Shown piece by piece: positions 250-44,079 of a DNA stretch of 64,000 bases. Position 1 is the first letter of the stretch, and every line of letters starts with the position of its first letter. The translations under genes were made by a program, and so were the position numbers. The notes below the pieces were generated by a model. That model was not told where the DNA came from, did no database searches, and saw only the letters and a list, made by a program, of their open reading frames with translations. The DNA lies in the IMG/VR virus record IMGVR_UViG_3300036770_004143, positions 1-64,000 of that record; one strand, written 5' to 3'.

Positions 250-1956
250 TTAAAATAAATCATCTTCTGTTATGCTCTTGCTCTTTTTATTATAATCAAC
301 TGATTTCTTATAAAAAAAATCTCCCTCCTTTGTTGATAAAATCTCCACATCAAACCATAATGTCTTCTCAATCTCTGTAAAATCAACTTCAAATACTGAT
401 TTCATCCCAATTCTATTTAATGAATTATTAAATCTATTTTGAATGAAATGTTTAATTGTATCTTTTGATAAAAAACTTAATTCACCATTCTCAAATATCC
501 AATCCAATATTCCACATTCAGCTGCATATGCTTTATGACAAGCTGACACAATCAACGCTTCAAATTCTTCGTCAAACCATTCTGGATTTTCTTCTTTGAT
601 AATGTTGATAAGTTCTGATCCAAAATTACCATGGATTTCTTCCTCCTTTGAGGTAGCTTCAACCACATTTGAAATACCTTTGAATAGATTTTTCTCCTTG
701 TTGAAGGACATCATAATCAAGAACTGACTAAATAAACTTACATGTTCAATAAACAAGGAAAATAATAATACAGACTTTGTGTACATTTTATTCTCTTTAC
801 TCCTTGTCCCATCTAAATATTTTGCCAAATAACTGATTCTATTCTTTATAGCAGGAATTTCAATAACAGTCTGGAACTCATTCTCCAATCCAAGAATTCT
901 TAATAATTGAGCATAAGCATCCTTATGACGAACTTCCGAGTTTCCTGAAATTAAAACTTTGTCATTATATCTAGTCACAATACATCCAGTAGGAACTGTA
1001 ACACAATAGATGTTACCATCATAATCTTCAATGGTAGGTTTATCAGTTATAGAAGAAAAGGTGTTAGTTTTTACAAAACTTACATTGTATATATCTTTAT
1101 CATTAGTTATATCAACTACATACCCAGCAAAAATACCTATAACTTGCAAATTATCTGCAAACAATTTACTAATAGTTTGGTGTTTAATAACATAATCACC
1201 ATTCTGAGTGTCACTATCAAGTTTAGACCCCTCCAATTTTGTTAATTCATAAATAAAAGAATTGCACCACTTTTCAGATTTATCTGATAAATCAATACAA
1301 TCAAAGTTTCCAATATTAATTTTATCATCCAAACTCAACTCATCCACACCCTCATTAACAAATTTACCAGAAAAAGGCAATTTCATATCACTACTAAATT
1401 TACCAATATCTTTTATAGCCTTCTTTATAATATTACCACTCCTTGTTTTGTAGTAGATATTATGGTTGGGGGTTAGTAATGCATTATATGTTTGGTTCTC
1501 AATCCTATGCATCTTTCCCTTGTAAGGTTCATTGATAATATTACTTGGTAAAACAGATGTCATTGTATTGGTTTCTAAATCATATTGAATAACCTCTGTA
1601 TTATTATCAATATCCTTAAAGTTAACCCAACCTTTTGGTGTTAATATTTCAGTTCCCTCACCATGACATTCGGCAAAAGTCATACCAACATCACCAATTT
1701 CAGTTATTGGCATCCTCTTATACAAGTCAGCCCAGAATGTTTTTACATTTACCTCAATTTGAGCAATTGCCAACATTGACCTTTTAATAACCTCCCTCTC
1801 CTCATTTGATATCTTTGTTTTATAATCATCAATATCAGTTGTGAAATTGAATTCAGAGTGTATCCAGTATGAGTGTCTAATTGCATCCTTATATGCTAAT
1901 AAGGATGGATATTCATAAGGCAAAATGTTTATCCTCTTTTCAAAAATGTTCTTCAT
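250..1956 (-). CDS. nrdB: Ribonucleotide reductase class I beta subunit containing an intein
   Basis: Ferritin-like R2 motifs (QIE, E-VRH, IEHVSLFSQF, EEEIH, C-terminal DFF...Y), interrupted by a 243-aa insert. Confidence 0.92.
   Translation of the reverse strand: MKNIFEKRINILPYEYPSLLAYKDAIRHSYWIHSEFNFTTDIDDYKTKISNEEREVIKRSMLAIAQIEVNVKTFWADLYKRMPITEIGDVGMTFAECHGEGTEILTPKGWVNFKDIDNNTEVIQYDLETNTMTSVLPSNIINEPYKGKMHRIENQTYNALLTPNHNIYYKTRSGNIIKKAIKDIGKFSSDMKLPFSGKFVNEGVDELSLDDKINIGNFDCIDLSDKSEKWCNSFIYELTKLEGSKLDSDTQNGDYVIKHQTISKLFADNLQVIGIFAGYVVDITNDKDIYNVSFVKTNTFSSITDKPTIEDYDGNIYCVTVPTGCIVTRYNDKVLISGNSEVRHKDAYAQLLRILGLENEFQTVIEIPAIKNRISYLAKYLDGTRSKENKMYTKSVLLFSLFIEHVSLFSQFLIMMSFNKEKNLFKGISNVVEATSKEEEIHGNFGSELINIIKEENPEWFDEEFEALIVSACHKAYAAECGILDWIFENGELSFLSKDTIKHFIQNRFNNSLNRIGMKSVFEVDFTEIEKTLWFDVEILSTKEGDFFYKKSVDYNKKSKSITEDDLF
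940..1668 (-). mobile_element. cis intein in nrdB (243 aa) with degenerate LAGLIDADG remnant
   Basis: Begins CHGEGTEILTPKGW, block B LTPNH, ends YCVTVPTGCIVTRYNDKVLISGN/S. Excision restores FAE-SEVRH. Confidence 0.9.
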
Positions 1957-2033
1957 ATATTTTTTTTTATTGGTTAAGATAAATATGAAACCAGGTTATA
2001 AAAGTATTCAATTTTGATTATAAAATCAAATTT

Positions 2034-2492
2034 TTATAAAAAATTGTCATTGCTATTTTTCTTAACCAATAACTCCTTAATCCTTTCTTTCTTACGTTCC
2101 ACTTGTTGTTCCTCAAACCCTAGGAATGTTGCTGTTGTATCGGTATCAATTTCAAGCATTTCATTATCAAACTTGCAATTCTCAAACACAATACCATCTT
2201 TACCAATCCTTGACTTGGTTATTGCCACAGTTGCCAAATTCATCTCTTTCTGTTGCAAACTCTTTGCAATACTAATAATAACATGGCCAACCTGGGCTTT
2301 CTTTATTGACCCCCCCATTTGGTCATTTGTTACCACATTTGCAGAAATAGATGAGTTGTGTGTGTAAATGTCATTGGCATAAAACATATGGGTGTCATCA
2401 ACAGTAATGTCAATTGTATCCTCTTCACCTACCAATTCAATTGATTCAATTTCATCTAAAATAAAATCATTCTTGTTTAAAATTTGTTCCAT
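2034..2492 (-). CDS. Split-intein C-part (46 aa, 2355-2492) fused to the C-terminal fragment of a DnaB/gp41-like helicase
   Basis: ...DTIDITVDDTHMFYANDIYTHN/SS followed by helicase motifs (SIKKAQVGHVII, ITKSRIGKDG). Confidence 0.9.
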   Translation of the reverse strand: MEQILNKNDFILDEIESIELVGEEDTIDITVDDTHMFYANDIYTHNSSISANVVTNDQMGGSIKKAQVGHVIISIAKSLQQKEMNLATVAITKSRIGKDGIVFENCKFDNEMLEIDTDTTATFLGFEEQQVERKKERIKELLVKKNSNDNFL

Positions 2493-3699
2493 TTTTTAAA
2501 AAATTTAAGCAGTTATTTATTACAAAATCTTTATTACTCATATATTCAGATTCCTTGACCCTTTTAACAATATAACCTTTTTTAACCAAAAAATCATCTC
2601 TATTGCTATCTATCTTTTTTTGTTCATCTTTTGAATGCCAGTAATCCCCATCAAATTCTATTATTTTATTACCTAATTTAAAATCAACACTTATTATAGT
2701 CATATTATTCTCCCAAACATAAAAAACATACTCATTATTTAGTTCGTAAAAATAACAATTTAACCTATCATCATTTTCTAATTTAGAAAAAATACCCCAA
2801 AATAAATCTTGTGAAATTTTTGAATACTTATCTTTGAATACAGAGATTTTTGCCATCAAAAATTCTTTATACTTAATCTCCCCATCAAATTCCCCGTATT
2901 TTTCAATAAAAAATTCTTTGCTTTGTGAAAATTTTATCTTGGATATAAAGTCATCATATCTAATTTTACCATCAATATCACCATATCTATCTATAAATGA
3001 GTTTAAAGTTGTTTTAACCATACTAACACAATACTCATTCCAAAATTTCAACCCCTCTGTCTCCCCATGTTTATCAATATAATATGTCAAACTAAACCTA
3101 TATGATTGCCTTTGATTCCTATCATACCATTTCTTATAACCTAATTCAACACCATATCTATTTTGATATTCAGGTAATGTCCTCCCATTCCTATATGGTC
3201 TAATTTTTTTGTTTTTAGCCATAGTTGCAATTTTGGAATTTAATGTGTTTTCCCATCTTTTTCTACCCTCTTCTTCGCCATATCTCTCTATTGCTGGTTT
3301 TAAGCCATATGAAACAGCTTTTTTATTTCTTTGTTCCCATTTTTTTGTGCCAAGATCAATTCCATATTTTTTTATAAAGTTATTTTTATCCATCTTAACT
3401 TTATCTTTATATTCATCTTGTTTTATTTTCCAATTATCCCCGTATCTTATTTTACAAGCATACTCACTAATGGCATCATTTTTTAACTTTCTAACAATAA
3501 CACCTAACCTACCTAACCATTTAGATTCAACATTGTTTAATATGAAATCACTTATATTTAGTAATCTATTTTTTATAGAATTAGTATCATAATATTCTAT
3601 AATTTTATAAATTTCACAATATTGATTTTTAGTTATCAAATGTTTAACTTCTTTAATTTTCTTATAATTAAGAAATTGTTCAATAGTAATTACCCCCAT
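2467..3699 (-). CDS. Free-standing putative homing endonuclease with a Vsr/DUF559-like C-terminal nuclease domain
   Basis: C-terminal VDFKLGNKIIEFDGDYWH...D..RD...GYIVKRV; repeated (K/R)YG...G...W/Y units; lies between the two split-intein halves. Confidence 0.8.
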   Translation of the reverse strand: MGVITIEQFLNYKKIKEVKHLITKNQYCEIYKIIEYYDTNSIKNRLLNISDFILNNVESKWLGRLGVIVRKLKNDAISEYACKIRYGDNWKIKQDEYKDKVKMDKNNFIKKYGIDLGTKKWEQRNKKAVSYGLKPAIERYGEEEGRKRWENTLNSKIATMAKNKKIRPYRNGRTLPEYQNRYGVELGYKKWYDRNQRQSYRFSLTYYIDKHGETEGLKFWNEYCVSMVKTTLNSFIDRYGDIDGKIRYDDFISKIKFSQSKEFFIEKYGEFDGEIKYKEFLMAKISVFKDKYSKISQDLFWGIFSKLENDDRLNCYFYELNNEYVFYVWENNMTIISVDFKLGNKIIEFDGDYWHSKDEQKKIDSNRDDFLVKKGYIVKRVKESEYMSNKDFVINNCLNFLKNGTNFKQE

Positions 3700-3751
3700 C
3701 TAATTTTATTTTAATATAAATATCACAAATGTTAAATAAGTTAGATGGGGG
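3693..3751 (-). promoter_or_regulatory. RNA hairpin sequestering the endonuclease start codon, with a TATTTATA motif in the loop
   Basis: 11-bp perfect inverted repeat CCCCCATCTAA (3693-3703) / TTAGATGGGGG (3741-3751); one arm contains the ATG; motif at 3715-3722. Confidence 0.7.
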
Positions 3752-3756
3752 CACAA

Positions 3757-5082
3757 TTATTTTTTAATAAAAAGTGTATTACCAACAGACAATCCACTGT
3801 CAATGGATAAGAAACCCCCACCTAATGTTGGAAATTTGTGTTTTGCTGACACTTTTATTTCCTTTCCATTTTTTGTCTTAATTCTATAAACAGGCTGTTT
3901 CTCAATAGGGAATACATAACTAATTTCTTTATATCCTTTATGTGTTAGAATATTATCTCCAACAACAACATCCTTTATTTGAATCAATCCTTTATTCTCA
4001 ATATCCACAATAGTATCTAAAGAAACACAGCGATTTCCTTGTGTACCTAACCATCCAGCAATATTTAATTCATGACACATAGCCTCAAAGTGTCTAATAA
4101 CTGATCCTTCATTCTTCCACTCATCATTACCTTGTCTATCTGGAACAACACAATCAATATAATCCAAAACAACCAAATCAAGTTTAATACCATCAGCAAT
4201 AATCTTTCTAATTTGATTCTTAATTTGATTCATTGTCAATGTGTCAGATGGCAATTTCTTTAAAATCAACTTATTTGTATGAGTTTCTTTTATATTATTA
4301 ACAGTTTCATAAACAACATCCTTATGATTTGGTAATTCATCTGGGGATATTTTTGTCCAAAGAGTAATGTGTTTTCTCTGAATAATTTTTGGATTATCTT
4401 CAAAAAAGATATGTAGAACATTATAATTGTTATTGAATGCTGTGTTTGCAACCAAGGTCAATAGAGTTGATTTACCAATACCTGGACCTGCAAATATAAT
4501 ACCAACCTCACCTTTGGCTAACCCCCCCTTTAAGAGAACGTCTATGCCCTTTACACCCATTGGTATGGGGTGTCTATAATCCTCATCCAATACACCCACC
4601 AAGTCATTAAAAACCTCAAAACCGTTTGATTCCTTAACACCAACTTGCAAGGCATATCTTAATAACTCCTCAAGTTGATCATAAGATTCAAAGTCACCCT
4701 CATTAATGACTTTCTGTGCCTTTTCCAAAACAATCTTAACTTCTTCTTGTTTGCAGAATTTAAGTGCTTTTTCTTGAACAAGTTCAACACCATCTAATGG
4801 CGCTGAACTTATTTTAGTTATAGTGTCAATCACAATCTTCAATGCCAATTCTTGTGATATTTCAGATTTGGCAATCATATTTAGTGTTTCAAAGTTTGGG
4901 GCTGCATCATATTTCTTATGATACTCCTTAATCATTTGTATGATTAACTTAAAATACTTATTCTCAAAATAAGATATTTTAATAAAATCTAATATGGCTC
5001 TTGCAAATTCCTTATCTAAAATAATCTGATTGATTAATTGCAACTGGAACGTCTGACCCAGGTAATCAAAATTCTTTGACAT
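3757..5082 (-). CDS. DnaB/gp41-like replicative helicase N-terminal fragment fused to split-intein N-part (90 aa, 3760-4029)
   Basis: Walker A AGPGIGKST, Walker B LVVLDYID, GTQGNR, then CVSLDT...SAKHKFPT...GLSVGNTLFIKK-stop. Confidence 0.92.
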   Translation of the reverse strand: MSKNFDYLGQTFQLQLINQIILDKEFARAILDFIKISYFENKYFKLIIQMIKEYHKKYDAAPNFETLNMIAKSEISQELALKIVIDTITKISSAPLDGVELVQEKALKFCKQEEVKIVLEKAQKVINEGDFESYDQLEELLRYALQVGVKESNGFEVFNDLVGVLDEDYRHPIPMGVKGIDVLLKGGLAKGEVGIIFAGPGIGKSTLLTLVANTAFNNNYNVLHIFFEDNPKIIQRKHITLWTKISPDELPNHKDVVYETVNNIKETHTNKLILKKLPSDTLTMNQIKNQIRKIIADGIKLDLVVLDYIDCVVPDRQGNDEWKNEGSVIRHFEAMCHELNIAGWLGTQGNRCVSLDTIVDIENKGLIQIKDVVVGDNILTHKGYKEISYVFPIEKQPVYRIKTKNGKEIKVSAKHKFPTLGGGFLSIDSGLSVGNTLFIKK

Positions 5083-5093
5083 AAAAATAAAGA

Positions 5094-5552
5094 TTAATGG
5101 TTAGATAATAAATTTTTCTCTAAATACTGATGTGTTAAGTTTTGGTTGATTAGGATATTTGTCAAATCCTTCAATGAATCTTTAATGAAATGGCGAATAT
5201 CAACAGTATATCTAACCTTTGGTGGATATAACTTCCCATCAACTATTCTATGGGATACAACTTGGTCTCCAATTTTTACATAAATGTTGAATAATTCAGC
5301 TTCATCTGTTGATGAGGTCTCCATAATTGAAGGGTCATACAAAATACTCTCTTTGTTCTCAACAAGATACCCAATTGATTTCATCTTTAAGTATTGTGTC
5401 AAATCCTCTGAAAAATACTTGACAAACTCATAGAGTTCAAAAGAATCCTTAGCATCAGGATTGATACCCTTAATGTTTAAAAACCTCTGAACAATAATGT
5501 TGTTGTTCAATGTTAGCAAAAACTCCACCTTTGTTGTTTCACTCTGTCTCAT
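5094..5552 (-). CDS. Hypothetical protein in replication operon
   Basis: 152-aa ORF, co-oriented and tightly packed. Confidence 0.7.
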   Translation of the reverse strand: MRQSETTKVEFLLTLNNNIIVQRFLNIKGINPDAKDSFELYEFVKYFSEDLTQYLKMKSIGYLVENKESILYDPSIMETSSTDEAELFNIYVKIGDQVVSHRIVDGKLYPPKVRYTVDIRHFIKDSLKDLTNILINQNLTHQYLEKNLLSNH

Positions 5553-5569: not shown

Positions 5570-6568
5570 TTAAAATTTTTTCTCTTTTCTACTTAATTTC
5601 ATAAATGGCTTAACAAAATCAACCCAAGCATCATCCCTTTTTGGTAAGAATTTAAAAAACCCATCATCCCTCATTAACTTCAATAAGTTTGTATAACTCC
5701 TATCAGTTGGGTCTAATCTCTCACTATAAATTTCATAAACCATTGTCTTGCCTTCATCTGTGATTAACGGATTTCTTAAATCAATTATTTTTCCTGTCTT
5801 CTCAAAAAACTCATCCCCAACCAAACCAGATTTGCTAATTCCAGATAATAGATTACTCAATGTCTTGCTCTTTGTTTTTTCAAACAATACTTTTGCCTCA
5901 TCTAAAACTTCTTGTAAGGTATAATCTCTCTTATCAAAATTAGGAAAAAATGTCTTTAATTTCTTCTCACCAAAATTTGTGATGCCATAAATGTTGTCAG
6001 ATGTATCACCAATCAATACTTTGTAAAGATAAACATTATTATGCGGAATATCAATGTTTTTGAAATGAATTAAATCCCCTTTTTTGGAATATGTTTTTGA
6101 TACAGGGGAAAATAACATAACATTCTCACCAATCAACTGGGTCAAATCCTTATCCCCAGAAAAAATAATCATATTCTCATCCTTTGCAATATGAGTGTAT
6201 TGTGCAATCAAATCATCTGCCTCATTTTGGTCAACTTGGCATTGTCTTACAAAAACTTCCTCAAGATATTCTTTAACCCTTTCCCTTTGGTATAGGTAAG
6301 ATTCATATTTATGATCATCCAAAGAAATTCTACGATTCTCTTTGTATCTTGGATAGATGTTTTTTCTTATTAGTGAGTTTTCATTCCCATCCCAGAATAC
6401 AACAACTTTATCATGATTATGTTTCTCAAGAAATAATCTAATTGTATTTAGAAAATGGAAAACCCCACCAATATGTTTGCCTTCAGAATAAAATTCACGA
6501 ACGCCATGAAAACCAATTGTAAATAAATTGTTTCCATCTATTAGTAGGGTTTTCTTCATATTATTCAA
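5570..6568 (-). CDS. 5'-3' exonuclease / flap endonuclease (T4 RNase H-like)
   Basis: LLIDGNN, VFWDG, YKENR, EADDLIA, SGDKD, GDTSDNI motifs. Confidence 0.9.
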   Translation of the reverse strand: MNNMKKTLLIDGNNLFTIGFHGVREFYSEGKHIGGVFHFLNTIRLFLEKHNHDKVVVFWDGNENSLIRKNIYPRYKENRRISLDDHKYESYLYQRERVKEYLEEVFVRQCQVDQNEADDLIAQYTHIAKDENMIIFSGDKDLTQLIGENVMLFSPVSKTYSKKGDLIHFKNIDIPHNNVYLYKVLIGDTSDNIYGITNFGEKKLKTFFPNFDKRDYTLQEVLDEAKVLFEKTKSKTLSNLLSGISKSGLVGDEFFEKTGKIIDLRNPLITDEGKTMVYEIYSERLDPTDRSYTNLLKLMRDDGFFKFLPKRDDAWVDFVKPFMKLSRKEKKF

Positions 6569-7565
6569 AAATTATAGTTTCCTCTTCTTCCTTTTCAGAA
6601 AAAGTAATATCCCCATCCCCAGATAAAATACCATTCCAGTATTGAGAATATTCTTTCTTATACTTTTCAATGGATTCCTTTGTATCTGGCAAATAACCTT
6701 GTGGAACCGCCAATATCTTTCCATCTTTATATGCTATACCAGTGACATGGTTCTTCAATATGGATACTTTTGTCCTAATTGCATAGGAAACAGTCCTTCC
6801 ATTCTTTGTTGCTGTTATATGGTTAATACCAGCATTCTTCTGATTTCCAAATAAGAATATTAATGAAGATGCCAACCATAAAGCCTCACCACCTTTTGCT
6901 TTGATTGTTGGTTGTCCAAATGGCGAATCTGGTAATTCTACCCAAGGTTGATTGATTACTACCATTGTGTTATGGTAGGGGTATTCTTCTTTCTTTGATT
7001 TTGAAATCCTTGAATGTAATCCCATTCCAACCTTATCTGCAAGAACTGCTGCATTATGCATTTTACCCCCCTTGCCATCATAAGTCATCTTGCAAGGTAT
7101 TGATCCAATACTATCAATTAAGAATAAAACAGAATATGGTAAATCCCCCTTTTCCTGGGCATCCAGAATCTCATTGATGAAATCTGTCATCTGTTCAATA
7201 TAATCAAATGAATCATTAAAGATAAAATCACCATCCCATTCACCCTCATCATTAAGTTCAGCATTCAATCCCAATTCAACAGCATGGGTCCAATTCCACT
7301 TCTTTTCTGTAATAATGAATATAGGTAAATGACCTTTCTTTTGGGCGTCGGCTGCTGCCAATATCATTGCTGTTGTCTTACTTGTATTGGAATGTCCTAA
7401 GAACATATTAATACCACCCATTACTGGACCAGGAACACCACAAGCATTATAAAAAGCATCACCACATGAATAATAATCCTCTGGTTTATATTTTGTTTTT
7501 GTAGAAAACTTTTCCTTGATAGCATCCACACTGGTTTTTGCTACCTTTTTCTTTATTCCTGCCAT
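6561..7565 (-). CDS. RecA/UvsX-like recombinase
   Basis: P-loop-like GHSNTSKT, LIDSIG, VINQ, KGGEAL, KNH motifs; sits between SSB and exonuclease. Confidence 0.8.
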   Translation of the reverse strand: MAGIKKKVAKTSVDAIKEKFSTKTKYKPEDYYSCGDAFYNACGVPGPVMGGINMFLGHSNTSKTTAMILAAADAQKKGHLPIFIITEKKWNWTHAVELGLNAELNDEGEWDGDFIFNDSFDYIEQMTDFINEILDAQEKGDLPYSVLFLIDSIGSIPCKMTYDGKGGKMHNAAVLADKVGMGLHSRISKSKKEEYPYHNTMVVINQPWVELPDSPFGQPTIKAKGGEALWLASSLIFLFGNQKNAGINHITATKNGRTVSYAIRTKVSILKNHVTGIAYKDGKILAVPQGYLPDTKESIEKYKKEYSQYWNGILSGDGDITFSEKEEEETIIFE

Positions 7566-7587
7566 ATATTTTTTTTGATTTTAAAAG

Positions 7588-7640
7588 AGAGATTTTTTGC
7601 TCAAAGTATTGTTTTATGGTACTTTTTGCAAAAAATCTCT
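7588..7640. promoter_or_regulatory. Long imperfect hairpin between SSB and recombinase genes
   Basis: AGAGATTTTTTGC...GCAAAAAATCTCT 13-bp arms plus an inner AAAGTA/TACTTT stem. Confidence 0.55.
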
Positions 7641-7650
7641 TTTAGGTTAA

Positions 7651-8508
7651 TTAAAATGGTAATTCATCATCACTATACTCCTCTTCAACAACAACACTTG
7701 TTTGTTGAACTGTTGCATTTTTAGCAACAGTTGCCCCACCAAATGATGCCTCTGAATTTGAACTATTCAGATAAACATATTTACCTTGGGAATCATCCCA
7801 TCTTGGGGATTCACCTCTTGAAATTGCTTCAAGATATTCTAATGGTTTCCTGCTATAAACATCTCTCCATGTTGATTCATCATTTGCCCATTTCTTTGCA
7901 AGATTCACATCTGTTGATAATGGTGTTGGGTCATCATACATGATTGTTGAAACAGTTGTGTATTCCTTACCTTTTGGACTTTTTGATTTAACTAATTCAA
8001 TAATTAAATCTCTTCCTGTATCCATATCAGATATATCCCCCTTGTTTCTAAAGATTGGAATAATCTTATCAAGAATACCATCTTTCTTGTAATTGTGCTT
8101 GAACCTCCAATATTTTGGCCCATCTTGTTCATTGTCACGGTCAATTACCTTAACAACATAGAATAATTTGGCTTTATAATCTTTTGCCAATTCGTCATCA
8201 TCCTTTCTCTTTGTTGCTTTTAGTGCATTATACACATCAGCCAATGGAGATGCTTCATTGTCATTTCCTGCTGGGTCATAAATCTTTTGGTAGTAACCAC
8301 CAACTTGTAATTCATGAAACCAAGCCTCCTTAAAAACAGATGACCCATCTGTTGTAGGTAAAATCCTAATCCTTCTTTGCCCTGTACTTTCTTTGTCATT
8401 TAACAATAATGTAAAATAACGTTTCATTCTGTCTTCCTGTGATAATTTTTGGGAATCCCCTTTTTGGTTTTTTTCATACTGCGCCATTATGGCATCTAAA
8501 TTCGACAT
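7651..8508 (-). CDS. Single-stranded DNA-binding protein (gp32-like)
   Basis: RIRILP, VIDRD, GRDL motifs; acidic tail ending DDELPF; start taken at MSNLDAI. Confidence 0.8.
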   Translation of the reverse strand: MSNLDAIMAQYEKNQKGDSQKLSQEDRMKRYFTLLLNDKESTGQRRIRILPTTDGSSVFKEAWFHELQVGGYYQKIYDPAGNDNEASPLADVYNALKATKRKDDDELAKDYKAKLFYVVKVIDRDNEQDGPKYWRFKHNYKKDGILDKIIPIFRNKGDISDMDTGRDLIIELVKSKSPKGKEYTTVSTIMYDDPTPLSTDVNLAKKWANDESTWRDVYSRKPLEYLEAISRGESPRWDDSQGKYVYLNSSNSEASFGGATVAKNATVQQTSVVVEEEYSDDELPF

Positions 8509-8565
8509 ATTATATAGTTTTTGTTTACAATGCTTCAACTCTACAATGATAGGTAAGTTTAAAGG

Positions 8566-9593: not shown

Positions 9594-12500
9594 TTACTCC
9601 AATTTTGGGTGTAAAATTAATTTTGTATAATTTGTCCACCAATATTTAATATTTAATAATTTGTTTTCATTTGAAACTATACCCCCAATTATATCATTCT
9701 CTTCAATTTTTTGATTTCCCTTGCTAAAATTGGAACTATTTTCAATTGAATCTCTAATAGTTTTTTCAGTTATTTTGTAAATATTTGCTTCTGTTTGCCC
9801 AGATTCTGCAATAAACTTAAAGCCAGTATAAGGAATTTTATTAGGGTTTCTATCTATCTTTAAACTCACAGCTATTGTATATGTATCTCCTGAATTAACC
9901 TTAACATCAAAAAATGAAATAACTGGTGCACTATCTAGTATATATAATCTCACCAAGGTATCTTCTATGGTTTTATTCATTGCATCCAAATATAATAATT
10001 CTTTTGGATTATTTGCCTCAAAAAACATATCAAGAACATATGGTAAAGTATATTCTGGTTCTGCTGGTGTTCTTACAATTTTAATATTATTATAGGTATA
10101 TTCACACACTCTATTTAATTTAGCACCCTCTGACTTATTCCTAGCACTAACATATAATTCCTTTTGGTCTTCTGTAAGTTTTGCTGGGGGTGTCAAAGCC
10201 TTTAATGATGCATTTGCATCTGCAAATTTTTTATCCAATTTGGCATAAAATTTATTCTTATATAATCTATCAAAATTTTGGGCAGCATCAAGGTTTGTAT
10301 TATTACTTAAAGCCTGATTATATAACCAATCTATAATATAAAATTTAACAAAACTTTCACTTTTGTCACCCTCCAAACTAGAAAATTTAGTCATAAAAGG
10401 AATTACATAAATACTCATAAATTGAATATATAATTCAATTGATTTGAAAATAGCAAAAGGTGTTTTTATCTTATCATTTTCATTACTAGTTGCACAAAAG
10501 TATAATGGTTGTCCTCCATTATAAGATGAAATTTCCCCCTTATTATAAGTTAACCACACATTTCCAAAATTATTATGATTTGCCTTAAAACCATCTTTTT
10601 CATAAGATGCCAAATAACTAATAAGGTATATATAGTCTGCCAATTTCTTATCTGGAACCAATGAATTTATCATTGTATGAATTTGTGTGGCTGATGAATA
10701 AACTATTAATTCTTCTGTAGTTTGTTCATATTCAGAATAACCTGAATATAAGTAGTTACTACACTCACTTGAATTTGTTTGTTTTGAACCTTGTGTTTGT
10801 GTGTTATTTGTTGCAGTAGCTTCTTCATTTTTATCATTAACAATAGATTTTGCAAAATTGCTTTCAATCTTTGTTAATAAGTTCTCATTAATACTTGTGA
10901 GGTATGTATCTGTGCTTGGAGGTGAATAAATACTTTGTCTAACACCTGTGAATGTTGTTTCAAATGAACCTGGTGCAATATTATGTGAAACTTCTGTAAT
11001 AAAATAAGGACCCCCAAACATAGGAACATGTTCCAAATTGAAATACATTGTTGGTTGTATCAATGCATTGCCCATACAGTTAATTGTTGACTTGTAACTC
11101 AAGTTCTTATACAAATTAAATAATGACACACTTTGTGTTGCCACCCCCCTATTTGATGATGAATTTCTTAAAGCCTCCTGTTGAATTAATGATTCAAGAG
11201 TTGCTGTACCACTATTCTGATCAACTTGTATGCCATAGAATATTGCTTGATTTCTAATCCCTGCATCTACCAAGAAACTAACACATTTATTTGATTGTGA
11301 CCAATCTTTCTTATTTGTCTGGTCCTCCAAGAAAGGTATCTTAGATGGTTTTAACATATCAATAGCATCATCACCATATCTAAAATCTTTTGGTCCAGCT
11401 GGGGTTGTTGACCCCCTACCAGAATATATACAAACAAGTTTTGGTCCTGATTTTCTATAATCAACATCAGAATAATTCCCCCAGACATCATTTGCTATTT
11501 CTGTTGCAGTACCAATAACTTCATTAATATCATCATTTGCTGATAATGCCCCATAAAAATTAACATAAGATGGCATTGGCAAAACATTAAAATTATTTTT
11601 AACCAAAATTCCACCAATAAAATTAAAGACAGGGGTTTTTAAGTTTGTTCTTGTTCCAATAAAAATCTTCTTTAAATCAAAAATATCAACATAATACAAA
11701 TCACCTATGTTCCTATTACCCCTATCCAAGAATATTACATCTTCAAATAATGTACGAGTTGTATATTCACTACCAGATATCCATTTATCATTTATGGCTT
11801 TAAATGTTTCATATAAATCATATTTTGAAAACTTGCTATCCAATCCTGAATTTATCTCATTAATTTCAACAATATCAATATTATTTATTTCCCTCTCCAA
11901 TAAGGATAATGTCTGATTCACATTGTCTTCCAAGAATGTATCCAATGCTTTTTGGTTATTATCCATCAGTATTAAGAATTGTTCCCTTGTAATGTTTGGA
12001 TTTTTTAATTTTTGTGTTGCATATATCTTTATTGGTTTTGCAAGTGCAATGATATTCTCTGATGAAAACTCAATATTATTATCAATAAAGAAATCTGTAA
12101 TATATGAACCAGTATTCTTATATGTCAAAGATTCAATGGTGGAGAATCCAACATGTAATCTTAATGTTTCCCAAGCAGGGGCATTTGTTAATTCTGATGA
12201 TTGAAGTGATATGTTATTTGGTAAAGTGTTTGCAACATATCCTTTGAACCTTTTCTGATTCTCTATGGTTGACCTCCCCCCTAAATGACTTATCAATGAA
12301 TTATATTCATATCTATCATATTGTGTTGGATTTCCATACTTAAACAAAACATCATAACTCAAAAACCCATCCAAAAATTCTCTAATATTTTGGAATTGAT
12401 AATCTGCTGTTTTATTGTAAAAATCAGTATCATTCAAATTACTATAATTAGATGGGACTTCCATCAAATTTCTATATAATAATTGGAAATTTCTATATGC

Positions 12501-15500
12501 TGCCACAGGATTTCCATATTCCAATCCAACCAAATTTATCTGATCTTTGTTTTCATTTATGTCATAAATTGATTTGCTAAAATCCAAAAACTCATTCTCA
12601 AATAAATTTAATGTGTCATAATCAAAAACAGAAAACATATCCTCAATTGAGGCATAATCCCCAGAACTTAAGATTGAAAATGAACTAATGTCTTTCTTTC
12701 TATTCAAATATTCTGTCGGTAAAGGCTTTTTCAAGTTTTTAAATGTAAATGAATTAAATGTATCTTGCATTGTGACATTAACAGCACCATTATGTGCAAC
12801 ATCCAATAATTCATCCAAAGAAGAATAATAAATATCTGAACTATTTTTTAAAAAATTATTATCAGTAATATTATTATTTGTTGATGGTAAAATATAATAT
12901 TTTGATGTTAAACTAAAGTTAACATCCTCACAATAATCACTAAATGTGGAACTATCATATATATTTTTTGGCACTAAAGTTGTATAACAATTAAATGTCA
13001 ATCCACTCTTTTCAAAACTAAATGATTTAAGCACTTTTAAACCCCTCTTTTCATTTACATTCAATTCATTATTTGTAAATCCAGAGAATAAATCATACCC
13101 ATTCAAGAATGCATTGTAATCATTCATCATAACTGGATAAAACCCAACATTCACATTATTATCAGATTTAAGGGATATAGTTTGATTTCCATTTATGATA
13201 TACTGGAAATTTTCATTTGCATTATAATTTGACTTATAATCAAAGTCTTTCCATACATCATCCAAAAAGTCATCCCCTGTCTTAACATAATTCTTATATC
13301 TATGCCAAATGGATCCATATTTCAATATCCAAGCATATGGTAACTTATGTAAAGCAGAGTACTTTATGAAGGTTGAAAAAACGTGTCCATTCTTCTCACT
13401 TTGCCCCCTGGTGATAAAAAAATCAGTAAGTGGGGATAAGGGTAGGCTATTCAAAAAAAGATAAGCAGAAGCAATATATGGATGTTTTTCACCTATCCTC
13501 CACTTGCTAACTCCAAGTTGGATTGCATTTGTAAAGATAGGTGTGTTAATTAATGCTCTAAATTGGTTTGATGAAAAATTATCCTGGAATATTTGCCCAT
13601 ATGTTGCCCCACCTTGTGATGCAAAAAACTTAAATGGTCTATTTGTTACAACCTGATTATATTCCTTAAAATTTGTAATCACATTCCTTTTTTGATTGAA
13701 AAGAATTGTATTCTTTGTATCAAATTTATTTGGAAATAAATTGATTAAATTATCATTAACCCATATTGGATCTGTAAAAGGATATGTGAAATTTATGCTA
13801 TTTTCAGTTGGTGCTTTCTGTATTACATCTGTAATTGTTTTGACATTACCCTCATTCAAATTATTTGAGAACTTATCTGTTGTTAATTTAAATTCACTTA
13901 TATCATATATCTTGCTTGGGGTATCTAATAAGTCACTTATATACCTTGAATTTGGTACTCCATCCAGATATTTATTATACCTTTCTGAAACACCTCCTGA
14001 CATTTCTTCCAGAAATTCCTTATAGTTATCATAATCCAACCCCCCTTCTGAAAATAATATATTCTTTAATTGTTGGATAAAAATTATGGAATTTGTCTTT
14101 AATGTATTACTTATATTCTTAAATTCATTTTCCTTTATCAATAAACCAATTCTTTTATCCTTTTCATAAATGGCTGAAAACCCTGAATGGTATGATGCTA
14201 AAACAAGTCTATCCCATAATTCATAAAAGAATTTAACATTTGTTGTTAACTCATATGGTAAAGTGGCAAAGGGGTATTCTATTGTATTTGGAACATAACT
14301 ATTCCTAATTGTCTTATCTAAATCAAGTGCATCCTTTGGGGAGGGGGTTTCCAAACGTTTGGAATAACCATTTATATATTCCTCAACAAATTCAACTTCA
14401 GGCCATTTACTATAATTAAATCCCTTTGTAGCATTAACAATAGATGGGTCTCCTGGATATATTAATTCATATTTATTTGCTTCCTTCTTATCATTTGTAT
14501 AAAACACAGAAGGCCAAGGAAATACAATTTTATCATTTTCATTATCATCACGTTGACTATTATCATCAACTGCAATTTTATCATTACCTAATACTGCATT
14601 TTTTCTATCAGTATCAAGTCTAACATTCCAGGCTGAACTATGAACATCTTCCATCAATCTAAGGAATCCTTCTGTTGTTGCCATAATTACTGCAACAACA
14701 TTTTTAATTGTTGGCTTAAACCCAATTCCTGTTTCCTTTTTCTCAATCTTTAATGCCAACTCCTCTGATAAGGCTTTTTCAAGTGCATTTAATTCATTAA
14801 TGAATTTTGATTCCATTATATTCCTTTCATTAATAAAATTTGTAATATTGAAAACTGGAGTGGTTTTTGATTCACCTGATAATGTATATTTGTAATATAT
14901 AGTACTTTCAATTCTACTACGGCAAATTTCTTCAGTTAAATTTTCAACTTCAATTGGCGAAATGGATTTGTTCTTTGATTTATAAGTCTCACACCAATTA
15001 ATATCAGGATTGGTAACATGAAACAAATCATAATTTATATTGTTAGCAATAGGTAATGTTCCATAAATTCCAAAAGTGGGATTATCATTTAATTCAGCTG
15101 TATATTTTGATATTATGGTTTTTAAATCACTTTCAACCAAAAATAACCTTCCATCCTTAATATTGTCAATCAATTCTTTTTTAACACCAAATATAACATC
15201 AGTTGCATTATTTAAAATAATTGGTCTTGTATCCAAGTATTTGTTAAACCAAGACCTAAGATTACCCCTAATTTCCTGGTAATAATTGGCAAGAAATTTC
15301 TTATACCTTTTCCCATCTGTTAACTTCTGAACATCAACCTTATTCAATGAGTTCAAGACATTCTGCTCAAACATCTCAAGTTTGTATGTTAATTCAGTTA
15401 ATGTTAATTCAGGAAAATTAGCATCAATTAAACCCTTTGATTTATAATCCTTATATACTTCTATTATCTTCTGATAACCAAGTTGGGTATTCACCTCAAA

Positions 15501-16367
15501 ATTAGTTGTATCCTCAAGTGAAACTTGAGTTTGATTATCTGTTTGAGTAATTATATTATTGACTTGAGATGCTGTTAAATTTGAAACGTTTGTAATATTT
15601 GATTGACTTATCTTATATTTTTTTGAATACATATTTGGACAAGCAATCAAATGCCCAACACTTATGTCAGATAACACATTATACTTAAATCCAAGAAACT
15701 CCAAAGTAACTGTATAATCTCCATTATTTGCATTATAAGATGCATTAAACTTCAATAAAACTAATTCATACCTAACAGCCTTTCCATAATATCCTTTAAT
15801 GGTCAAATAAAATGGGGGGTAAGGTAAATTGAAGAATGCTGCATATGGTGATTCATTTCCTAAACTAAACAATGCTCTCCCTTGAACATCTTCCATAATA
15901 ACTGTAACGGTTGGTACAAAAGATGAATTTGTCCTAATAGCAATACTCTTTATACCAAATAATGTATTATCTTCAATATTAGTAGCATAATTTAATGTAT
16001 AAGTTTCATTGTTCTCCTTTACTTGTTTGGAGTTCTGTTGATTTTTCCCTCCATTTTCAGTTAAAGAATCTTTTCCAGTAATTTCATCATAATATCCAGA
16101 TGTAAAATAATTATCTTTAGTATTTGGTTTCAAGAAATTTAATGTAGCAATATTCACATTCCTAACATTATCATTAACTGGACCCCCAACCAATAGTTTT
16201 GTTCTTGGAATCAACTTTGTTTCCAGATTGGCATACATAACAAAGTCTTCAGGTATTACTGCCCTGTCAATAACTTCCCCAGTATTTGTAATTACCTTGT
16301 TGGGGTCTATATATATAACATTCTGATAATCATATATAACATGTACATCACCTTGCTCATTTGCCAT
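9594..16367 (-). CDS. Very large virion protein, probable baseplate hub
   Basis: 2257 aa in tail module; hub-like segment MGNALIQPTMYFNL...GPYFITEVSHNI...FETTFTGVR. Confidence 0.6.
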   Translation of the reverse strand: MANEQGDVHVIYDYQNVIYIDPNKVITNTGEVIDRAVIPEDFVMYANLETKLIPRTKLLVGGPVNDNVRNVNIATLNFLKPNTKDNYFTSGYYDEITGKDSLTENGGKNQQNSKQVKENNETYTLNYATNIEDNTLFGIKSIAIRTNSSFVPTVTVIMEDVQGRALFSLGNESPYAAFFNLPYPPFYLTIKGYYGKAVRYELVLLKFNASYNANNGDYTVTLEFLGFKYNVLSDISVGHLIACPNMYSKKYKISQSNITNVSNLTASQVNNIITQTDNQTQVSLEDTTNFEVNTQLGYQKIIEVYKDYKSKGLIDANFPELTLTELTYKLEMFEQNVLNSLNKVDVQKLTDGKRYKKFLANYYQEIRGNLRSWFNKYLDTRPIILNNATDVIFGVKKELIDNIKDGRLFLVESDLKTIISKYTAELNDNPTFGIYGTLPIANNINYDLFHVTNPDINWCETYKSKNKSISPIEVENLTEEICRSRIESTIYYKYTLSGESKTTPVFNITNFINERNIMESKFINELNALEKALSEELALKIEKKETGIGFKPTIKNVVAVIMATTEGFLRLMEDVHSSAWNVRLDTDRKNAVLGNDKIAVDDNSQRDDNENDKIVFPWPSVFYTNDKKEANKYELIYPGDPSIVNATKGFNYSKWPEVEFVEEYINGYSKRLETPSPKDALDLDKTIRNSYVPNTIEYPFATLPYELTTNVKFFYELWDRLVLASYHSGFSAIYEKDKRIGLLIKENEFKNISNTLKTNSIIFIQQLKNILFSEGGLDYDNYKEFLEEMSGGVSERYNKYLDGVPNSRYISDLLDTPSKIYDISEFKLTTDKFSNNLNEGNVKTITDVIQKAPTENSINFTYPFTDPIWVNDNLINLFPNKFDTKNTILFNQKRNVITNFKEYNQVVTNRPFKFFASQGGATYGQIFQDNFSSNQFRALINTPIFTNAIQLGVSKWRIGEKHPYIASAYLFLNSLPLSPLTDFFITRGQSEKNGHVFSTFIKYSALHKLPYAWILKYGSIWHRYKNYVKTGDDFLDDVWKDFDYKSNYNANENFQYIINGNQTISLKSDNNVNVGFYPVMMNDYNAFLNGYDLFSGFTNNELNVNEKRGLKVLKSFSFEKSGLTFNCYTTLVPKNIYDSSTFSDYCEDVNFSLTSKYYILPSTNNNITDNNFLKNSSDIYYSSLDELLDVAHNGAVNVTMQDTFNSFTFKNLKKPLPTEYLNRKKDISSFSILSSGDYASIEDMFSVFDYDTLNLFENEFLDFSKSIYDINENKDQINLVGLEYGNPVAAYRNFQLLYRNLMEVPSNYSNLNDTDFYNKTADYQFQNIREFLDGFLSYDVLFKYGNPTQYDRYEYNSLISHLGGRSTIENQKRFKGYVANTLPNNISLQSSELTNAPAWETLRLHVGFSTIESLTYKNTGSYITDFFIDNNIEFSSENIIALAKPIKIYATQKLKNPNITREQFLILMDNNQKALDTFLEDNVNQTLSLLEREINNIDIVEINEINSGLDSKFSKYDLYETFKAINDKWISGSEYTTRTLFEDVIFLDRGNRNIGDLYYVDIFDLKKIFIGTRTNLKTPVFNFIGGILVKNNFNVLPMPSYVNFYGALSANDDINEVIGTATEIANDVWGNYSDVDYRKSGPKLVCIYSGRGSTTPAGPKDFRYGDDAIDMLKPSKIPFLEDQTNKKDWSQSNKCVSFLVDAGIRNQAIFYGIQVDQNSGTATLESLIQQEALRNSSSNRGVATQSVSLFNLYKNLSYKSTINCMGNALIQPTMYFNLEHVPMFGGPYFITEVSHNIAPGSFETTFTGVRQSIYSPPSTDTYLTSINENLLTKIESNFAKSIVNDKNEEATATNNTQTQGSKQTNSSECSNYLYSGYSEYEQTTEELIVYSSATQIHTMINSLVPDKKLADYIYLISYLASYEKDGFKANHNNFGNVWLTYNKGEISSYNGGQPLYFCATSNENDKIKTPFAIFKSIELYIQFMSIYVIPFMTKFSSLEGDKSESFVKFYIIDWLYNQALSNNTNLDAAQNFDRLYKNKFYAKLDKKFADANASLKALTPPAKLTEDQKELYVSARNKSEGAKLNRVCEYTYNNIKIVRTPAEPEYTLPYVLDMFFEANNPKELLYLDAMNKTIEDTLVRLYILDSAPVISFFDVKVNSGDTYTIAVSLKIDRNPNKIPYTGFKFIAESGQTEANIYKITEKTIRDSIENSSNFSKGNQKIEENDIIGGIVSNENKLLNIKYWWTNYTKLILHPKLE

Positions 16368-22602: not shown

Positions 22603-22645
22603 TATCTTTTATATATAAATATAATTAGTTGGGGTTTTAATGTTA

Positions 22646-24445: not shown

Positions 24446-24471
24446 AAAATATAATTTATATATATAAATAG

Positions 24472-27030: not shown

Positions 27031-27068
27031 AATAATTTTTTTAATATAAATATCATTAATTAATTAAA

Positions 27069-31223: not shown

Positions 31224-31274
31224 TATTATTTTTTATTTATTCATATAAATATCTAAAAAATAATCAAAAAACTA

Positions 31275-37989: not shown

Positions 37990-38080
37990 GTTTTTAACTT
38001 ATATTAATATAAATATATAGTAGTTAATAAATTGATAATTTGTTTGATTTTTATTATAATTAAAATTATGTAAATTACTT

Positions 38081-43237: not shown

Positions 43238-43641
43238 CTCCTATATATCTTTCCTTTTATAACTCCAGGTTTTATCATTTCTATTAATTGTTTATTTGTG
43301 TATTTTTTTAATGGTGTGTTATTTATATGTAAATTCCCACCAACTTTCAATCCTTCTGGTAGTGAGGTTATTTTTGAACCCATTAAAAATAAAGCACCTT
43401 CAACTGTTAAATCATTTGGTAATGAGGTTATGTCTGTTAAATATAAATTCAAATAACCACCAACTTTCAATCCTCTTGGTAATGAGGTTATTTTTGAGTA
43501 ATGTAAATTCAAATCACCTTTAACATTTAAATCTTCTTCTATTAATGGTTCATTATTTTTAAATTTCCATAAAAATGGTGCTCTATGCTCTTCCTTCTCT
43601 TCAAGGAAATCAAATATTCTTTTTAGTGCTTGTTTTTCCAT
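43234..43641 (-). CDS. LRR array protein 2 (3 repeats)
   Basis: Same caps and repeats. Confidence 0.85.
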   Translation of the reverse strand: MEKQALKRIFDFLEEKEEHRAPFLWKFKNNEPLIEEDLNVKGDLNLHYSKITSLPRGLKVGGYLNLYLTDITSLPNDLTVEGALFLMGSKITSLPEGLKVGGNLHINNTPLKKYTNKQLIEMIKPGVIKGKIYRR

Positions 43642-44045: not shown

Positions 44046-44053
44046 TATCTTAA

Positions 44054-44070: not shown

Positions 44071-44079
44071 TAATCTTTT

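What the first reader, a model, noticed from the sequence alone, without database searches (positions are those of the whole stretch)
3693..3751. Hairpin masks the endonuclease start codon, with a putative late promoter in its loop
Seen: the 57-nt gap holds an 11-bp perfect GC-rich stem in otherwise very AT-rich DNA; its 3' arm contains the endonuclease ATG (TTAG-ATG-GGGG) and the TATTTATA motif sits in the loop. Established: T4-type homing endonucleases such as I-TevI are silenced on early read-through transcripts by such hairpins and released by a late promoter inside them. Inference: both helicase halves are made early while the nuclease is delayed. This also supports TATTTAT as the late promoter.
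Basis: partly seen in the sequence, partly recalled or inferred. Interest (0 to 1): 0.7.

Follow-up and report, generated by a model that had tools for sequence, protein, structure and literature searches.

The report
Hairpin-masked start of a phage homing endonuclease
A selfish nuclease gene sits inside a phage helicase gene, and an RNA hairpin buries its start codon while a phage promoter motif sits in the hairpin loop; this is a well-supported new example of a control already described for T4-type phages and for this class of split-intein loci.

Summary
All genes here lie on the minus strand.

**The structure**
- A gp41/DnaB-type helicase gene is "fractured" into three parts: an N-half ending in a gp41-1-like N-intein (3757-5082), a free-standing Vsr/DUF559-type endonuclease (2467-3699), and a C-intein plus C-extein (2034-2492).
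- In the 57-nt gap, an 11-bp perfect stem (13 bp with G·U and U-A) pairs 3753..3741 with 3703..3691.
- The endonuclease AUG (3699..3697) lies in the 3' arm. ATATTTATA (3723..3715) lies in the loop.

**Evidence that it works as proposed**
- The fold is -22 kcal/mol, and no shuffle folds as well.
- Opening the start region costs 11-20 kcal/mol on read-through RNA, but about 3 kcal/mol on RNA that starts in the loop.
- ATATTTATA sits 9-25 nt before 46 genes of this 270-kb phage. These include the tail sheath, the terminase and the capsid operon, but no replication gene. The endonuclease copy lies at the modal distance.
- In 19 related loci a promoter-bracketing duplex recurs with different arm sequences. 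It is significant in 10 of 19, against 3 of 59 control genes.

**Status**
- Dassa et al. 2009 and the I-TevI/mobE literature already describe this architecture.
- New here: the motif is TATTTATA rather than TATAAATA, and the AUG itself is masked in a genome with almost no Shine-Dalgarno sites.
- Transcript starts and timing remain untested.

The parts
3757..5082 (-). Helicase N-half: gp41/DnaB-type N-extein (about residues 1-360, ending ...TQGNR) fused to a gp41-1-like N-intein (from Cys361 to the stop).
   Evidence: Pfam DnaB_C 1.1e-12 and Intein_splicing at 378-420. PDB gp41-1 intein 6qaz residues 14-90 match query 363-440 at E 1.2e-11, and the T4 gp41 helicase 8due matches 16-311. Colinear with the uninterrupted helicase of Flavobacterium phage immuto.
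3741..3753 (-). 5' arm of the masking hairpin (core 3751..3741, extended by G3752 and U3753). It starts 3 nt after the N-half stop codon.
3715..3723 (-). ATATTTATA, the promoter-like motif in the hairpin loop, 15 nt before the AUG. Predicted transcript start is about 3705-3712 (inferred, not mapped).
   Evidence: The same 9-mer is position-locked before 46 genes. TATTTAT is kept 10-22 nt before the AUG in 21 of 22 related loci.
3691..3703 (-). 3' arm of the hairpin. It contains the endonuclease start codon (3699..3697), 4 nt before it and codons 2-3.
2467..3699 (-). Free-standing homing-endonuclease gene (410 aa) with a Vsr/DUF559-type nuclease domain at residues about 335-401.
   Evidence: Pfam DUF559 27.3 bits (cut-off 20.6) and MTES_1575. 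Weak match to the I-Bth0305I catalytic domain 3r3p, E 0.14. Phage relatives are annotated 'putative VSR endonuclease'. Single copy in the genome.
2034..2492 (-). Helicase C-half: C-intein (about residues 1-46, ending ...THN) plus C-extein. Its first 26 nt overlap the end of the endonuclease ORF.
   Evidence: Intein_splicing 111-155. 6qaz residues 90-128 match query 8-46. The C-extein aligns to immuto helicase 353-405. Overlap from the coordinates.

Best explanation
This is a 'fractured' gp41-type helicase gene of an uncultured 270-kb T4-related myophage, probably infecting a Bacteroidota host. A homing-endonuclease cassette sits between the two halves of a split intein. The proposed working is as follows. 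Transcripts of the replication module read through helicase-N, the endonuclease and helicase-C. On these RNAs the sequence just after the helicase-N stop pairs with the endonuclease start region, so the AUG is locked in a 13-bp stem and the nuclease is not translated. Helicase-C has its own unstructured A/U-rich start inside the end of the nuclease ORF, so it is made, and the two halves are joined by trans-splicing. The phage's own single-element promoter ATATTTATA lies in the loop. Transcripts that start there, about 3705-3712, lack the 5' arm, so the AUG is free and the nuclease is made when this promoter class is active, most likely late. Shown here: the anatomy, the thermodynamics, the genome-wide behaviour of the motif, and conservation of the architecture. 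Inferred: promoter activity, the start site, late timing, and read-through.
For: - **Stem and AUG:**
- **Opening energy:** 11.5-20.3 kcal/mol on read-through RNA against about 2.8 kcal/mol on loop-started RNA.
- **Motif behaviour:** ATATTTATA is position-locked before 46 genes, and 69 of 123 TATTTATA copies lie in the 11.7% of the genome that is intergenic. Counts in the 80 nt before starts are 51 sense against 20 antisense. The motif often follows terminator hairpins.
- **Gene classes:** the motif heads the sheath, terminase-portal, the capsid operon, an adaptor-like gene and a peptidase, but no replication gene carries the perfect motif.
- **Cultured relative:** in Flavobacterium phage immuto the same motif precedes the sheath, tail-completion, hub and tape-measure genes, but not the replication genes.
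- **Within-genome control:** the endonuclease has by far the strongest promoter-bracketing duplex, -24.7 kcal/mol against -13.2 for the next best. The other strong hairpins are terminators that lie upstream of the motif.
- **Across 19 lineages of the same fractured gp41 locus:** 10 have a duplex with p<0.03 and dG of -13 or lower, always covering the AUG or the first codons. Only 3 of 59 control genes reach p<0.03 (Fisher 1.4e-5, Mann-Whitney 1.9e-7). The arm sequences differ between lineages: a C5/G5 core here, and runs such as CUUUUUCACUUUC, GCGGUUAACUUUUU or AUCUUUUUCAU paired with codons 2-6 elsewhere.
- **Natural variants keep the stem:** L004 has C>U giving G·U. The strain in run X26 combines that change with U3692>C, which turns the neighbouring G·U into G-C.
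- **Few Shine-Dalgarno sites:** only 8% of genes have an SD-like 4-mer, so access to the AUG region should be the main determinant of initiation.
- **No terminator:** no terminator-like site lies between 5100 and 2000.
- **Precedent:** PMC2988022 and PMC2677866.
Against: - No experimental datum exists. Metatranscriptome contigs are short and unstranded, and none covers 3697-3818.
- About half of the related lineages have weak or no significant hairpins (L010, L012, L013, L021, L023, L032, L039, L040).
- Sense folds are only marginally better than antisense folds (mean -2.15 kcal/mol, Wilcoxon p 0.09). In the window itself the antisense strand folds better (-28.9 against -22.1), so RNA on the sense strand is not proven by G·U bias.
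- A TATTTAT variant also lies 24 nt before the NrdB gene, and perfect copies precede a superoxide dismutase and an FtsH-like protease, so the motif class is not purely structural.
- The loop-started RNA still pairs its AUG weakly (P unpaired about 0.1).
- The 5' arm starts only 3 nt after the upstream stop codon, so terminating ribosomes could open it.
Confidence: 0.72

Rival explanations
1. Translational coupling rather than silencing. The hairpin is melted by ribosomes terminating at the helicase-N stop codon 3 nt upstream. The nuclease would then be made at a low, fixed ratio to helicase-N from the same early RNA, and the loop motif would add late expression.
For: The 5' arm begins at 3753 and the stop is at 3759..3757, which is within the reach of a terminating ribosome (established footprint knowledge). 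L011 has a similar short distance.
Against: In relatives with the strongest hairpins the 5' arm starts about 19-29 nt after the stop (L015, L016, L017, L022) or 11-13 nt after it (L014, L018, L028), mostly out of reach. Closeness to the stop is therefore not the conserved feature, whereas bracketing of the promoter motif is.
Confidence: 0.12
2. RNA processing or stability element. The stem would be a site for RNase III-type cleavage, or a protective hairpin that separates helicase-N mRNA from downstream RNA, with masking of the AUG incidental.
For: It is a long, perfect stem between two cistrons. Phage T4-type mRNAs are known to be processed (general knowledge; review PMC3014915 was listed but not read).
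Against: The 3' arm always includes the AUG or first codons although the arm sequences change. The promoter motif is always inside the loop. Cleavage within the stem would destroy the nuclease start region.
Confidence: 0.07
3. A DNA-level or inherited palindrome without a regulatory role. It could be a cassette boundary or recombination scar of the mobile endonuclease, a cruciform, or an operator for autorepression as in I-TevI.
For: The antisense strand and the DNA could form the same stem, and in the window the antisense fold is more stable. I-TevI represses its own late promoter through an operator that resembles its homing site.
Against: The gap region has no similarity to the reconstructed intein-less target (local alignment p 0.89 and 0.48). 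The arms flank only a 37-nt loop, not the cassette. Arm sequences co-vary across lineages while pairing is kept. G·U pairs occur in many of the stems.
Confidence: 0.05
4. The functional promoter is the + strand TATAAATA (the exact T4 late consensus), firing antisense into helicase-N.
For: TATAAATA is present on the + strand at 3715-3722.
Against: Genome-wide the position-locked orientation is TATTTATA in the sense of the downstream gene: 46 copies at 9-25 nt. TATAAATA in the sense orientation is scattered and mostly a by-product of A/T-rich leaders. TATAAATA counts in the window equal chance (18 against 16.7 expected).
Confidence: 0.03

Closest known systems
Fractured genes with split inteins and free-standing Vsr-like homing endonucleases (Dassa et al. 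2009, NAR 37:2560, PMC2677866), in particular the gp41-1 to gp41-8 loci
   Same: - A gp41-type helicase is broken into two adjacent ORFs at a split intein.
- A Vsr/DUF559-type endonuclease ORF lies between them.
- The endonuclease 3' end overlaps the C-half start by 26 bp here; the paper reports overlaps of 6-69 bp.
- A hairpin covers the endonuclease 5' region and holds a phage late-promoter-like motif. The paper reports hairpins in 15 of 16 loci, 10 of them with TATAAATA, and two conserved motifs that complement each other in the stem.
- The intein halves match the solved gp41-1 intein.
   Different: - The motif in the sense orientation is (A)TATTTATA, not TATAAATA.
- The masked element is the AUG and codons 2-3, with no Shine-Dalgarno sequence.
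- The genome is a 270-kb, 30% GC phage from freshwater, wastewater and subsurface samples, related to Flavobacterium phage immuto, rather than marine cyanophage-like contigs.
- The intein is not identical to gp41-1 (alignment).
Hairpin plus internal late promoter control of T4 I-TevI (also I-TevII, I-TevIII and segB) and of mobE in Aeromonas phage Aeh1 (Gott et al. 1988; Gibb and Edgell 2007, 2009; review PMC2988022)
   Same: - The endonuclease gene is embedded in an early or middle transcription unit.
- A stable RNA structure forms only on read-through transcripts and blocks initiation.
- A late promoter is placed so that late transcripts lack the inhibitory 5' sequence.
- Aeh1 mobE also splits an essential replication-related gene (nrdA) into two ORFs.
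   Different: - In those cases the structure sequesters a consensus Shine-Dalgarno site about 8 nt before the AUG, the promoter is TATAAATA, and activity was shown by primer extension and reporters.
- Here nothing has been measured, no Shine-Dalgarno sequence exists, and the promoter motif differs.
- No I-TevI-like operator resembling the homing site was found.
T4 late promoter TATAAATA recognised by gp55
   Same: A single 8-9 bp A/T-only element with no -35 partner, lying close upstream of late structural genes in a T4-related genome that has a gp23-type capsid, a gp18-type sheath and a gp41-type helicase.
   Different: - The central triplet is TTT instead of AAA in the sense orientation.
- The ATG follows only 9-25 nt after the motif.
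- A gp55-like sigma factor is only weakly indicated.

Membership tests
Fractured gene (split intein + free-standing endonuclease; Dassa 2009) | One host gene broken into two adjacent same-strand ORFs that together are colinear with an intact homologue | tested here: met
   N-extein aligns to immuto helicase 11-347 and C-extein to 353-405. ORFs listed.
Fractured gene (split intein + free-standing endonuclease; Dassa 2009) | The N-half ends with an N-intein and the C-half begins with a C-intein | tested here: met
   Pfam Intein_splicing on both halves. The gp41-1 intein 6qaz matches both halves at residues 14-90 and 90-128. Junctions read ...GNR|C... and ...THN|S.... Splicing activity was not tested.
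Fractured gene (split intein + free-standing endonuclease; Dassa 2009) | A free-standing Vsr-like (or GIY-YIG) endonuclease ORF lies between the halves | tested here: met
   DUF559 above the Pfam cut-off at residues 345-401. Relatives are annotated as VSR endonuclease. Nuclease activity was not tested.
Fractured gene (split intein + free-standing endonuclease; Dassa 2009) | The endonuclease 3' end overlaps the start of the C-half (6-69 bp) | tested here: met
   26-bp overlap, 2467-2492.
Fractured gene (split intein + free-standing endonuclease; Dassa 2009) | An RNA hairpin lies at the endonuclease 5' region | tested here: met
Fractured gene (split intein + free-standing endonuclease; Dassa 2009) | TATAAATA late-promoter element inside the hairpin (10 of 15 published hairpins) | tested here: not met
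   The sense strand reads TATTTATA; TATAAATA is on the opposite strand only. A different motif fills the functionally equivalent position.
I-TevI/mobE-type delayed translation of a homing endonuclease | The endonuclease gene lies inside a transcription unit of earlier genes, on the same strand, with no terminator before it | tested here: inconclusive
   Same strand, and no terminator-like site in 2000-5100. Co-transcription was not observed; RNA contigs are fragmentary.
I-TevI/mobE-type delayed translation of a homing endonuclease | A stable structure sequesters the translation initiation region on long transcripts | tested here: met
   Computed only. AUG P(unpaired) is at most 0.001 and opening costs 11.5-20.3 kcal/mol. 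The AUG, not a Shine-Dalgarno site, is sequestered.
I-TevI/mobE-type delayed translation of a homing endonuclease | A promoter is placed so that its transcripts lack the inhibitory 5' arm | tested here: inconclusive
   A promoter-like motif lies in the loop at the genome's modal distance from the ATG. Promoter activity and the start site were not measurable with these tools.
I-TevI/mobE-type delayed translation of a homing endonuclease | The endonuclease protein appears only late in infection | not testable with these tools
   Uncultured phage; no time-course data.
T4-type late promoter (gp55-dependent) | Consensus TATAAATA in the sense orientation upstream of late genes | tested here: not met
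   The position-locked motif is ATATTTATA (46 genes). TATAAATA in the sense orientation is not position-locked.
T4-type late promoter (gp55-dependent) | A phage-encoded gp55-family sigma factor | tested here: inconclusive
   The ORF at genome 86991-87725 (+) matches T4 gp55 at E 1.7e-4 and sigma-70 region 2 (TIGR02937) at E 1.3e-3, below the cut-off. It has no PHROG hit and no sigma-factor hit in Pfam.

The most novel reading that the evidence does not exclude
ATATTTATA may be the late-promoter consensus of a whole clade of T4-related myophages of Bacteroidota: this 270-kb phage, its metagenomic relatives, and Flavobacterium phage immuto. It would be read by a highly diverged gp55-like sigma factor. 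Because these hosts initiate translation without Shine-Dalgarno pairing, selfish endonucleases in this clade would be timed purely by burying the AUG. The comparative set found here, about 20 lineages with co-varying arms, would be the first evolutionary proof that the hairpin-plus-internal-promoter switch is under selection in fractured genes.
Probability: 0.45. Interest if true: 0.5.

Novelty: new member of a known kind. Interest (0 to 1): 0.33.

Why it matters
- **Portability of the timing device.** The same device used by T4 intron and free-standing endonucleases operates in a distant, uncultured phage lineage with a different promoter word and no Shine-Dalgarno sites. This supports the view that mobile nucleases must fit into the host phage's transcription programme to persist.
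- **Practical annotation value.** ATATTTATA is a usable marker for annotating late transcription units in this 270-kb phage and in Immutovirus-like Flavobacterium phages.
- **A new natural split intein.** The locus adds a relative of the gp41-1 split intein, a family widely used for protein ligation.
- **Not a new principle.**

Tried and rejected
- **Metatranscriptome evidence for a start in the loop.** I laid seven RNA runs (X15-X18, X25, X16, X30) and one run of unknown type. They gave only short unstranded Logan contigs, and none crosses 3697-3818. Two end just inside the ORF (X25 3452-3696, X16 3472-3670). Coverage is too sparse to count as evidence.
- **Operator mimicry as in I-TevI.** The gap does not resemble the reconstructed intein-less target site.
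- **Sense-versus-antisense folding to prove an RNA-level structure.** Not significant.
- **Sigma-70-type promoter scan.** A TTAACA-16-TAAAAT match lies in the loop, but such matches are no more frequent than in shuffles (52 against 60.8).
- **The enriched word AAACCTGGATTTATAAAAGG.** This is the conserved C-terminal coding end of a paralogous gene family, not a promoter.
- **Rfam.** Only sub-threshold noise.
- **Near-identity DNA search of cultured phages.** No match.
- **Read-through or frameshift fusing helicase-N to the nuclease.** The two ORFs are in the same frame (57 nt apart) but are separated by three stops, and the gap length is not conserved as a multiple of three in relatives.
- **Literature search for TATTTATA as a phage promoter.** Nothing relevant.
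- **gp55 homologue.** Only weak hits.

Full report
**1. What is there**

The first 38 kb of the window are transcribed from the minus strand. Three ORFs are involved.

- **ORF 3757-5082 (441 aa).** It has a DnaB_C/gp41-type helicase domain, and its last ~80 residues are an N-intein. Pfam gives Intein_splicing. The solved gp41-1 intein 6qaz residues 14-90 match at E 1.2e-11, and T4 gp41 helicase structures match residues 16-311.
- **ORF 2467-3699 (410 aa).** It carries a DUF559/Vsr-type nuclease domain at its C-terminus. It is weakly similar to the I-Bth0305I catalytic domain. Its phage relatives are annotated 'putative VSR endonuclease'.
- **ORF 2034-2492 (152 aa).** It begins with a C-intein (6qaz residues 90-128) and continues with the helicase C-extein.

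The exteins are colinear with the uninterrupted helicase of Flavobacterium phage immuto. That phage's replication module (SSB, RecA-like protein, 5'-3' exonuclease, helicase, NrdB) is syntenic with the window. The locus is therefore a 'fractured gene' in the sense of Dassa et al. 2009. It shares the typical overlap between the endonuclease end and the C-half start, 26 bp here.

**2. The observation**

- The word CCCCCATCTAA occurs at 3693-3703, and its reverse complement at 3741-3751. It occurs nowhere else in the 270-kb genome.
- On the minus-strand RNA the 5' arm starts 3 nt after the helicase-N stop codon.
- The 3' arm holds the endonuclease AUG (3699..3697).
- The 37-nt loop holds ATATTTATA (3723..3715).
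- RNAfold gives a 13-bp stem and -22.1 kcal/mol, with no shuffle as stable.
- The genome has more perfect inverted repeats than random sequence (52 against 12-26). Most are short-loop terminator-like hairpins. A G-C-rich stem with a long loop that straddles a start codon is exceptional.

**3. Is the loop motif a promoter?**

- I called 301 ORFs crudely. TATTTATA in the sense orientation is found in the 80 nt before 51 starts, against 20 in the antisense orientation.
- Forty-six copies lie 9-25 nt before an ATG, with a mode of 12-15 nt. In 41 of these 46 an A precedes the motif, and an A-rich leader follows.
- Sixty-nine of 123 genomic copies lie in the 11.7% of the genome that is intergenic.
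- The motif frequently follows a G-C-rich hairpin with a U-run, the layout of terminator then promoter.
- No upstream partner element is visible. It therefore looks like a single-element promoter, as T4 late promoters are.
- Genes headed by the motif include the tail sheath, the terminase large subunit (with portal directly downstream), the gene directly upstream of the gp23-type capsid gene, an adaptor-like protein, an M23 peptidase, and large virion-type proteins.
- DNA polymerase, SbcC, SSB, the RecA-like protein, the 5'-3' exonuclease and both helicases lack the motif.
- Exceptions are a superoxide dismutase, an FtsH-like protease and a variant copy before NrdB.
- In cultured Flavobacterium phage immuto, TATTTAT(A) precedes the sheath, tail-completion, hub and tape-measure genes. 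It precedes none of the annotated replication genes in the first 50 kb.
- The endonuclease copy is 15 nt from its AUG, which is the typical distance.
- 'Promoter, probably late' is thus well supported, but it remains an inference.
- The exact T4 consensus TATAAATA is only the antisense reading and is not position-locked in this genome.
- A possible phage sigma factor is only weakly indicated.

**4. Does the hairpin mask the start?**

- On RNAs that begin 60-200 nt upstream, the AUG is paired with probability above 0.999. Opening positions -4..+10 costs 11.5-20.3 kcal/mol.
- On RNAs that begin at 3706-3712, opening costs 2.7-2.8 kcal/mol.
- Only 8% of genes have any Shine-Dalgarno-like word, and leaders are 59% A. 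Accessibility of the start region should therefore dominate initiation.
- Among the 60 genes with a TATTTAT motif near the start, the endonuclease has by far the strongest duplex between the sequence before the motif and the sequence after it: -24.7 kcal/mol against -13.2 for the next best.

**5. Comparative test**

- The endonuclease recovered 80 related viral loci.
- In 22 full-length relatives the host gene and insertion site are the same (...GNR|C...).
- TATTTAT lies 10-22 nt before the AUG in 21 of the 22.
- I folded each locus, and also computed the duplex between the pre-motif and post-motif segments with shuffled controls. Ten of 19 non-redundant lineages have p<0.03 and dG of -13 kcal/mol or lower. 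In every one the 3' arm covers the AUG or the first codons.
- Only 3 of 59 control genes reach p<0.03, and only 1 of 59 reaches -13 kcal/mol (Fisher 1.4e-5, Mann-Whitney 1.9e-7).
- The arms differ in sequence and register between lineages, so pairing has been kept through change on both sides.
- The conserved DNA element just after the helicase-N stop is the 5' arm. This matches Dassa's remark that two conserved motifs complement each other in the stem.
- Close variants keep the stem. One has C>U giving G·U (L004). One strain has that change plus a neighbouring U>C that converts G·U into G-C.
- More distant Vsr-type endonucleases in other contexts (L048, L049) have strong hairpins that sequester a GGAGG site, with TATTTAT or TATAAATA in the loop.
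- About half of the lineages show weak or no hairpins, so the feature is frequent but not universal.

**6. Rivals**

- **Termination-coupled opening.** This is possible in this particular lineage, because the stop is 3 nt before the stem. That closeness is not conserved in the relatives.
- **A processing site, a DNA-level palindrome, or an operator.** I cannot exclude these. There is no similarity to the homing target, and the arms flank the promoter rather than the cassette.
- **An antisense T4-type promoter.** The genome-wide orientation of the motif contradicts this.
- **RNA-level proof through G·U bias.** Not achieved.

**7. Relation to what is known**

- The mechanism is the one established for I-TevI, I-TevII, I-TevIII, segB and Aeh1 mobE.
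- Its presence in front of Vsr-type endonucleases of fractured gp41 genes was reported in 2009.
- This locus is a new member of that kind.
- The differences are the promoter word (TATTTATA in the sense orientation), the absence of a Shine-Dalgarno sequence so that the AUG itself is buried, and the phage lineage.
- That lineage is a 270-kb, 30% GC, T4-related phage with a gp23-type capsid and gp18-type sheath. Its closest cultured relatives by sheath and synteny include a Flavobacterium myophage.

**8. Verdict**

- Transcript starts and timing are the missing experiments.

Noticed in passing
Whole genome G000; in the window e.g. 31224-31251, 27031-27052, 22603-22621, 24446-24470, 37990-38015: ATATTTATA is a position-locked, single-element, promoter-like motif before 46 genes (9-25 nt before the ATG), often just after terminator hairpins. 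The same word precedes tail genes of cultured Flavobacterium phage immuto (L098). No description of it as a phage promoter was found in the paper library.
   Followed up: partly
G000:C1:86991-87725 (+), outside the window (L095:1456-2190): A 244-aa ORF has weak similarity to the T4 late sigma factor gp55 (E 1.7e-4) and to sigma-70 region 2 (TIGR02937, E 1.3e-3). It is a candidate reader of the ATATTTATA motif.
   Followed up: partly
window 250-1956 (-): The ribonucleotide reductase small-subunit gene (568 aa) carries an intein (Intein_splicing hit at residues 114-322) directly downstream of the fractured helicase. A TATTTATC variant lies 24 nt before its ATG.
   Followed up: no
window 5570-8538 and L099:2426-7764: The replication module (SSB, RecA-like protein, 5'-3' exonuclease, helicase, NrdB) is syntenic with Flavobacterium phage immuto. 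There the helicase is uninterrupted, which makes it a natural intein-less, endonuclease-less comparison allele.
   Followed up: partly
window 16410-17585 (-): A 391-aa ORF gives a very strong transposase match (phrog_506, E 1.7e-132). It lies inside the phage genome, between the structural and replication blocks.
   Followed up: no
window 44046-44079: A 34-nt gap separates divergent genes 43641-44045 (-) and a Fe/Mn superoxide dismutase gene at 44080-44769 (+). It holds two back-to-back copies of the motif, one for each direction, forming a compact bidirectional promoter-like arrangement.
   Followed up: no
window 9594-16367 (-): A 2257-aa ORF in the replication block has no PHROG hit.
   Followed up: no
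G000 about 151-153 kb and 232 kb (outside the window): A family of paralogous small genes shares a conserved C-terminal coding end (...EMIKPGFIKG...). This produced a spurious 'upstream motif', AAACCTGGATTTATAAAAGG.
   Followed up: partly
Whole genome G000: Only 24 of 301 ORFs have a Shine-Dalgarno-like 4-mer, and positions -15..-1 are 59% A. This fits a Bacteroidota-type host that initiates translation without Shine-Dalgarno pairing.
   Followed up: partly
L048:2809-2908 and L049:2890-2989: Distant Vsr-type endonuclease genes in other viral contigs have very stable hairpins (z -6.6 and -3.5). These sequester a GGAGG ribosome-binding site, and TATTTAT and/or TATAAATA lie in the loop.
   Followed up: partly
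window 3692 and 3751 (run X26 contig): A natural strain variant carries two changes on the RNA strand, C3751>U and U3692>C. They swap a G-C and a neighbouring G·U pair and so keep stem strength. The second change is non-synonymous (Val3 to Ala).
   Followed up: partly
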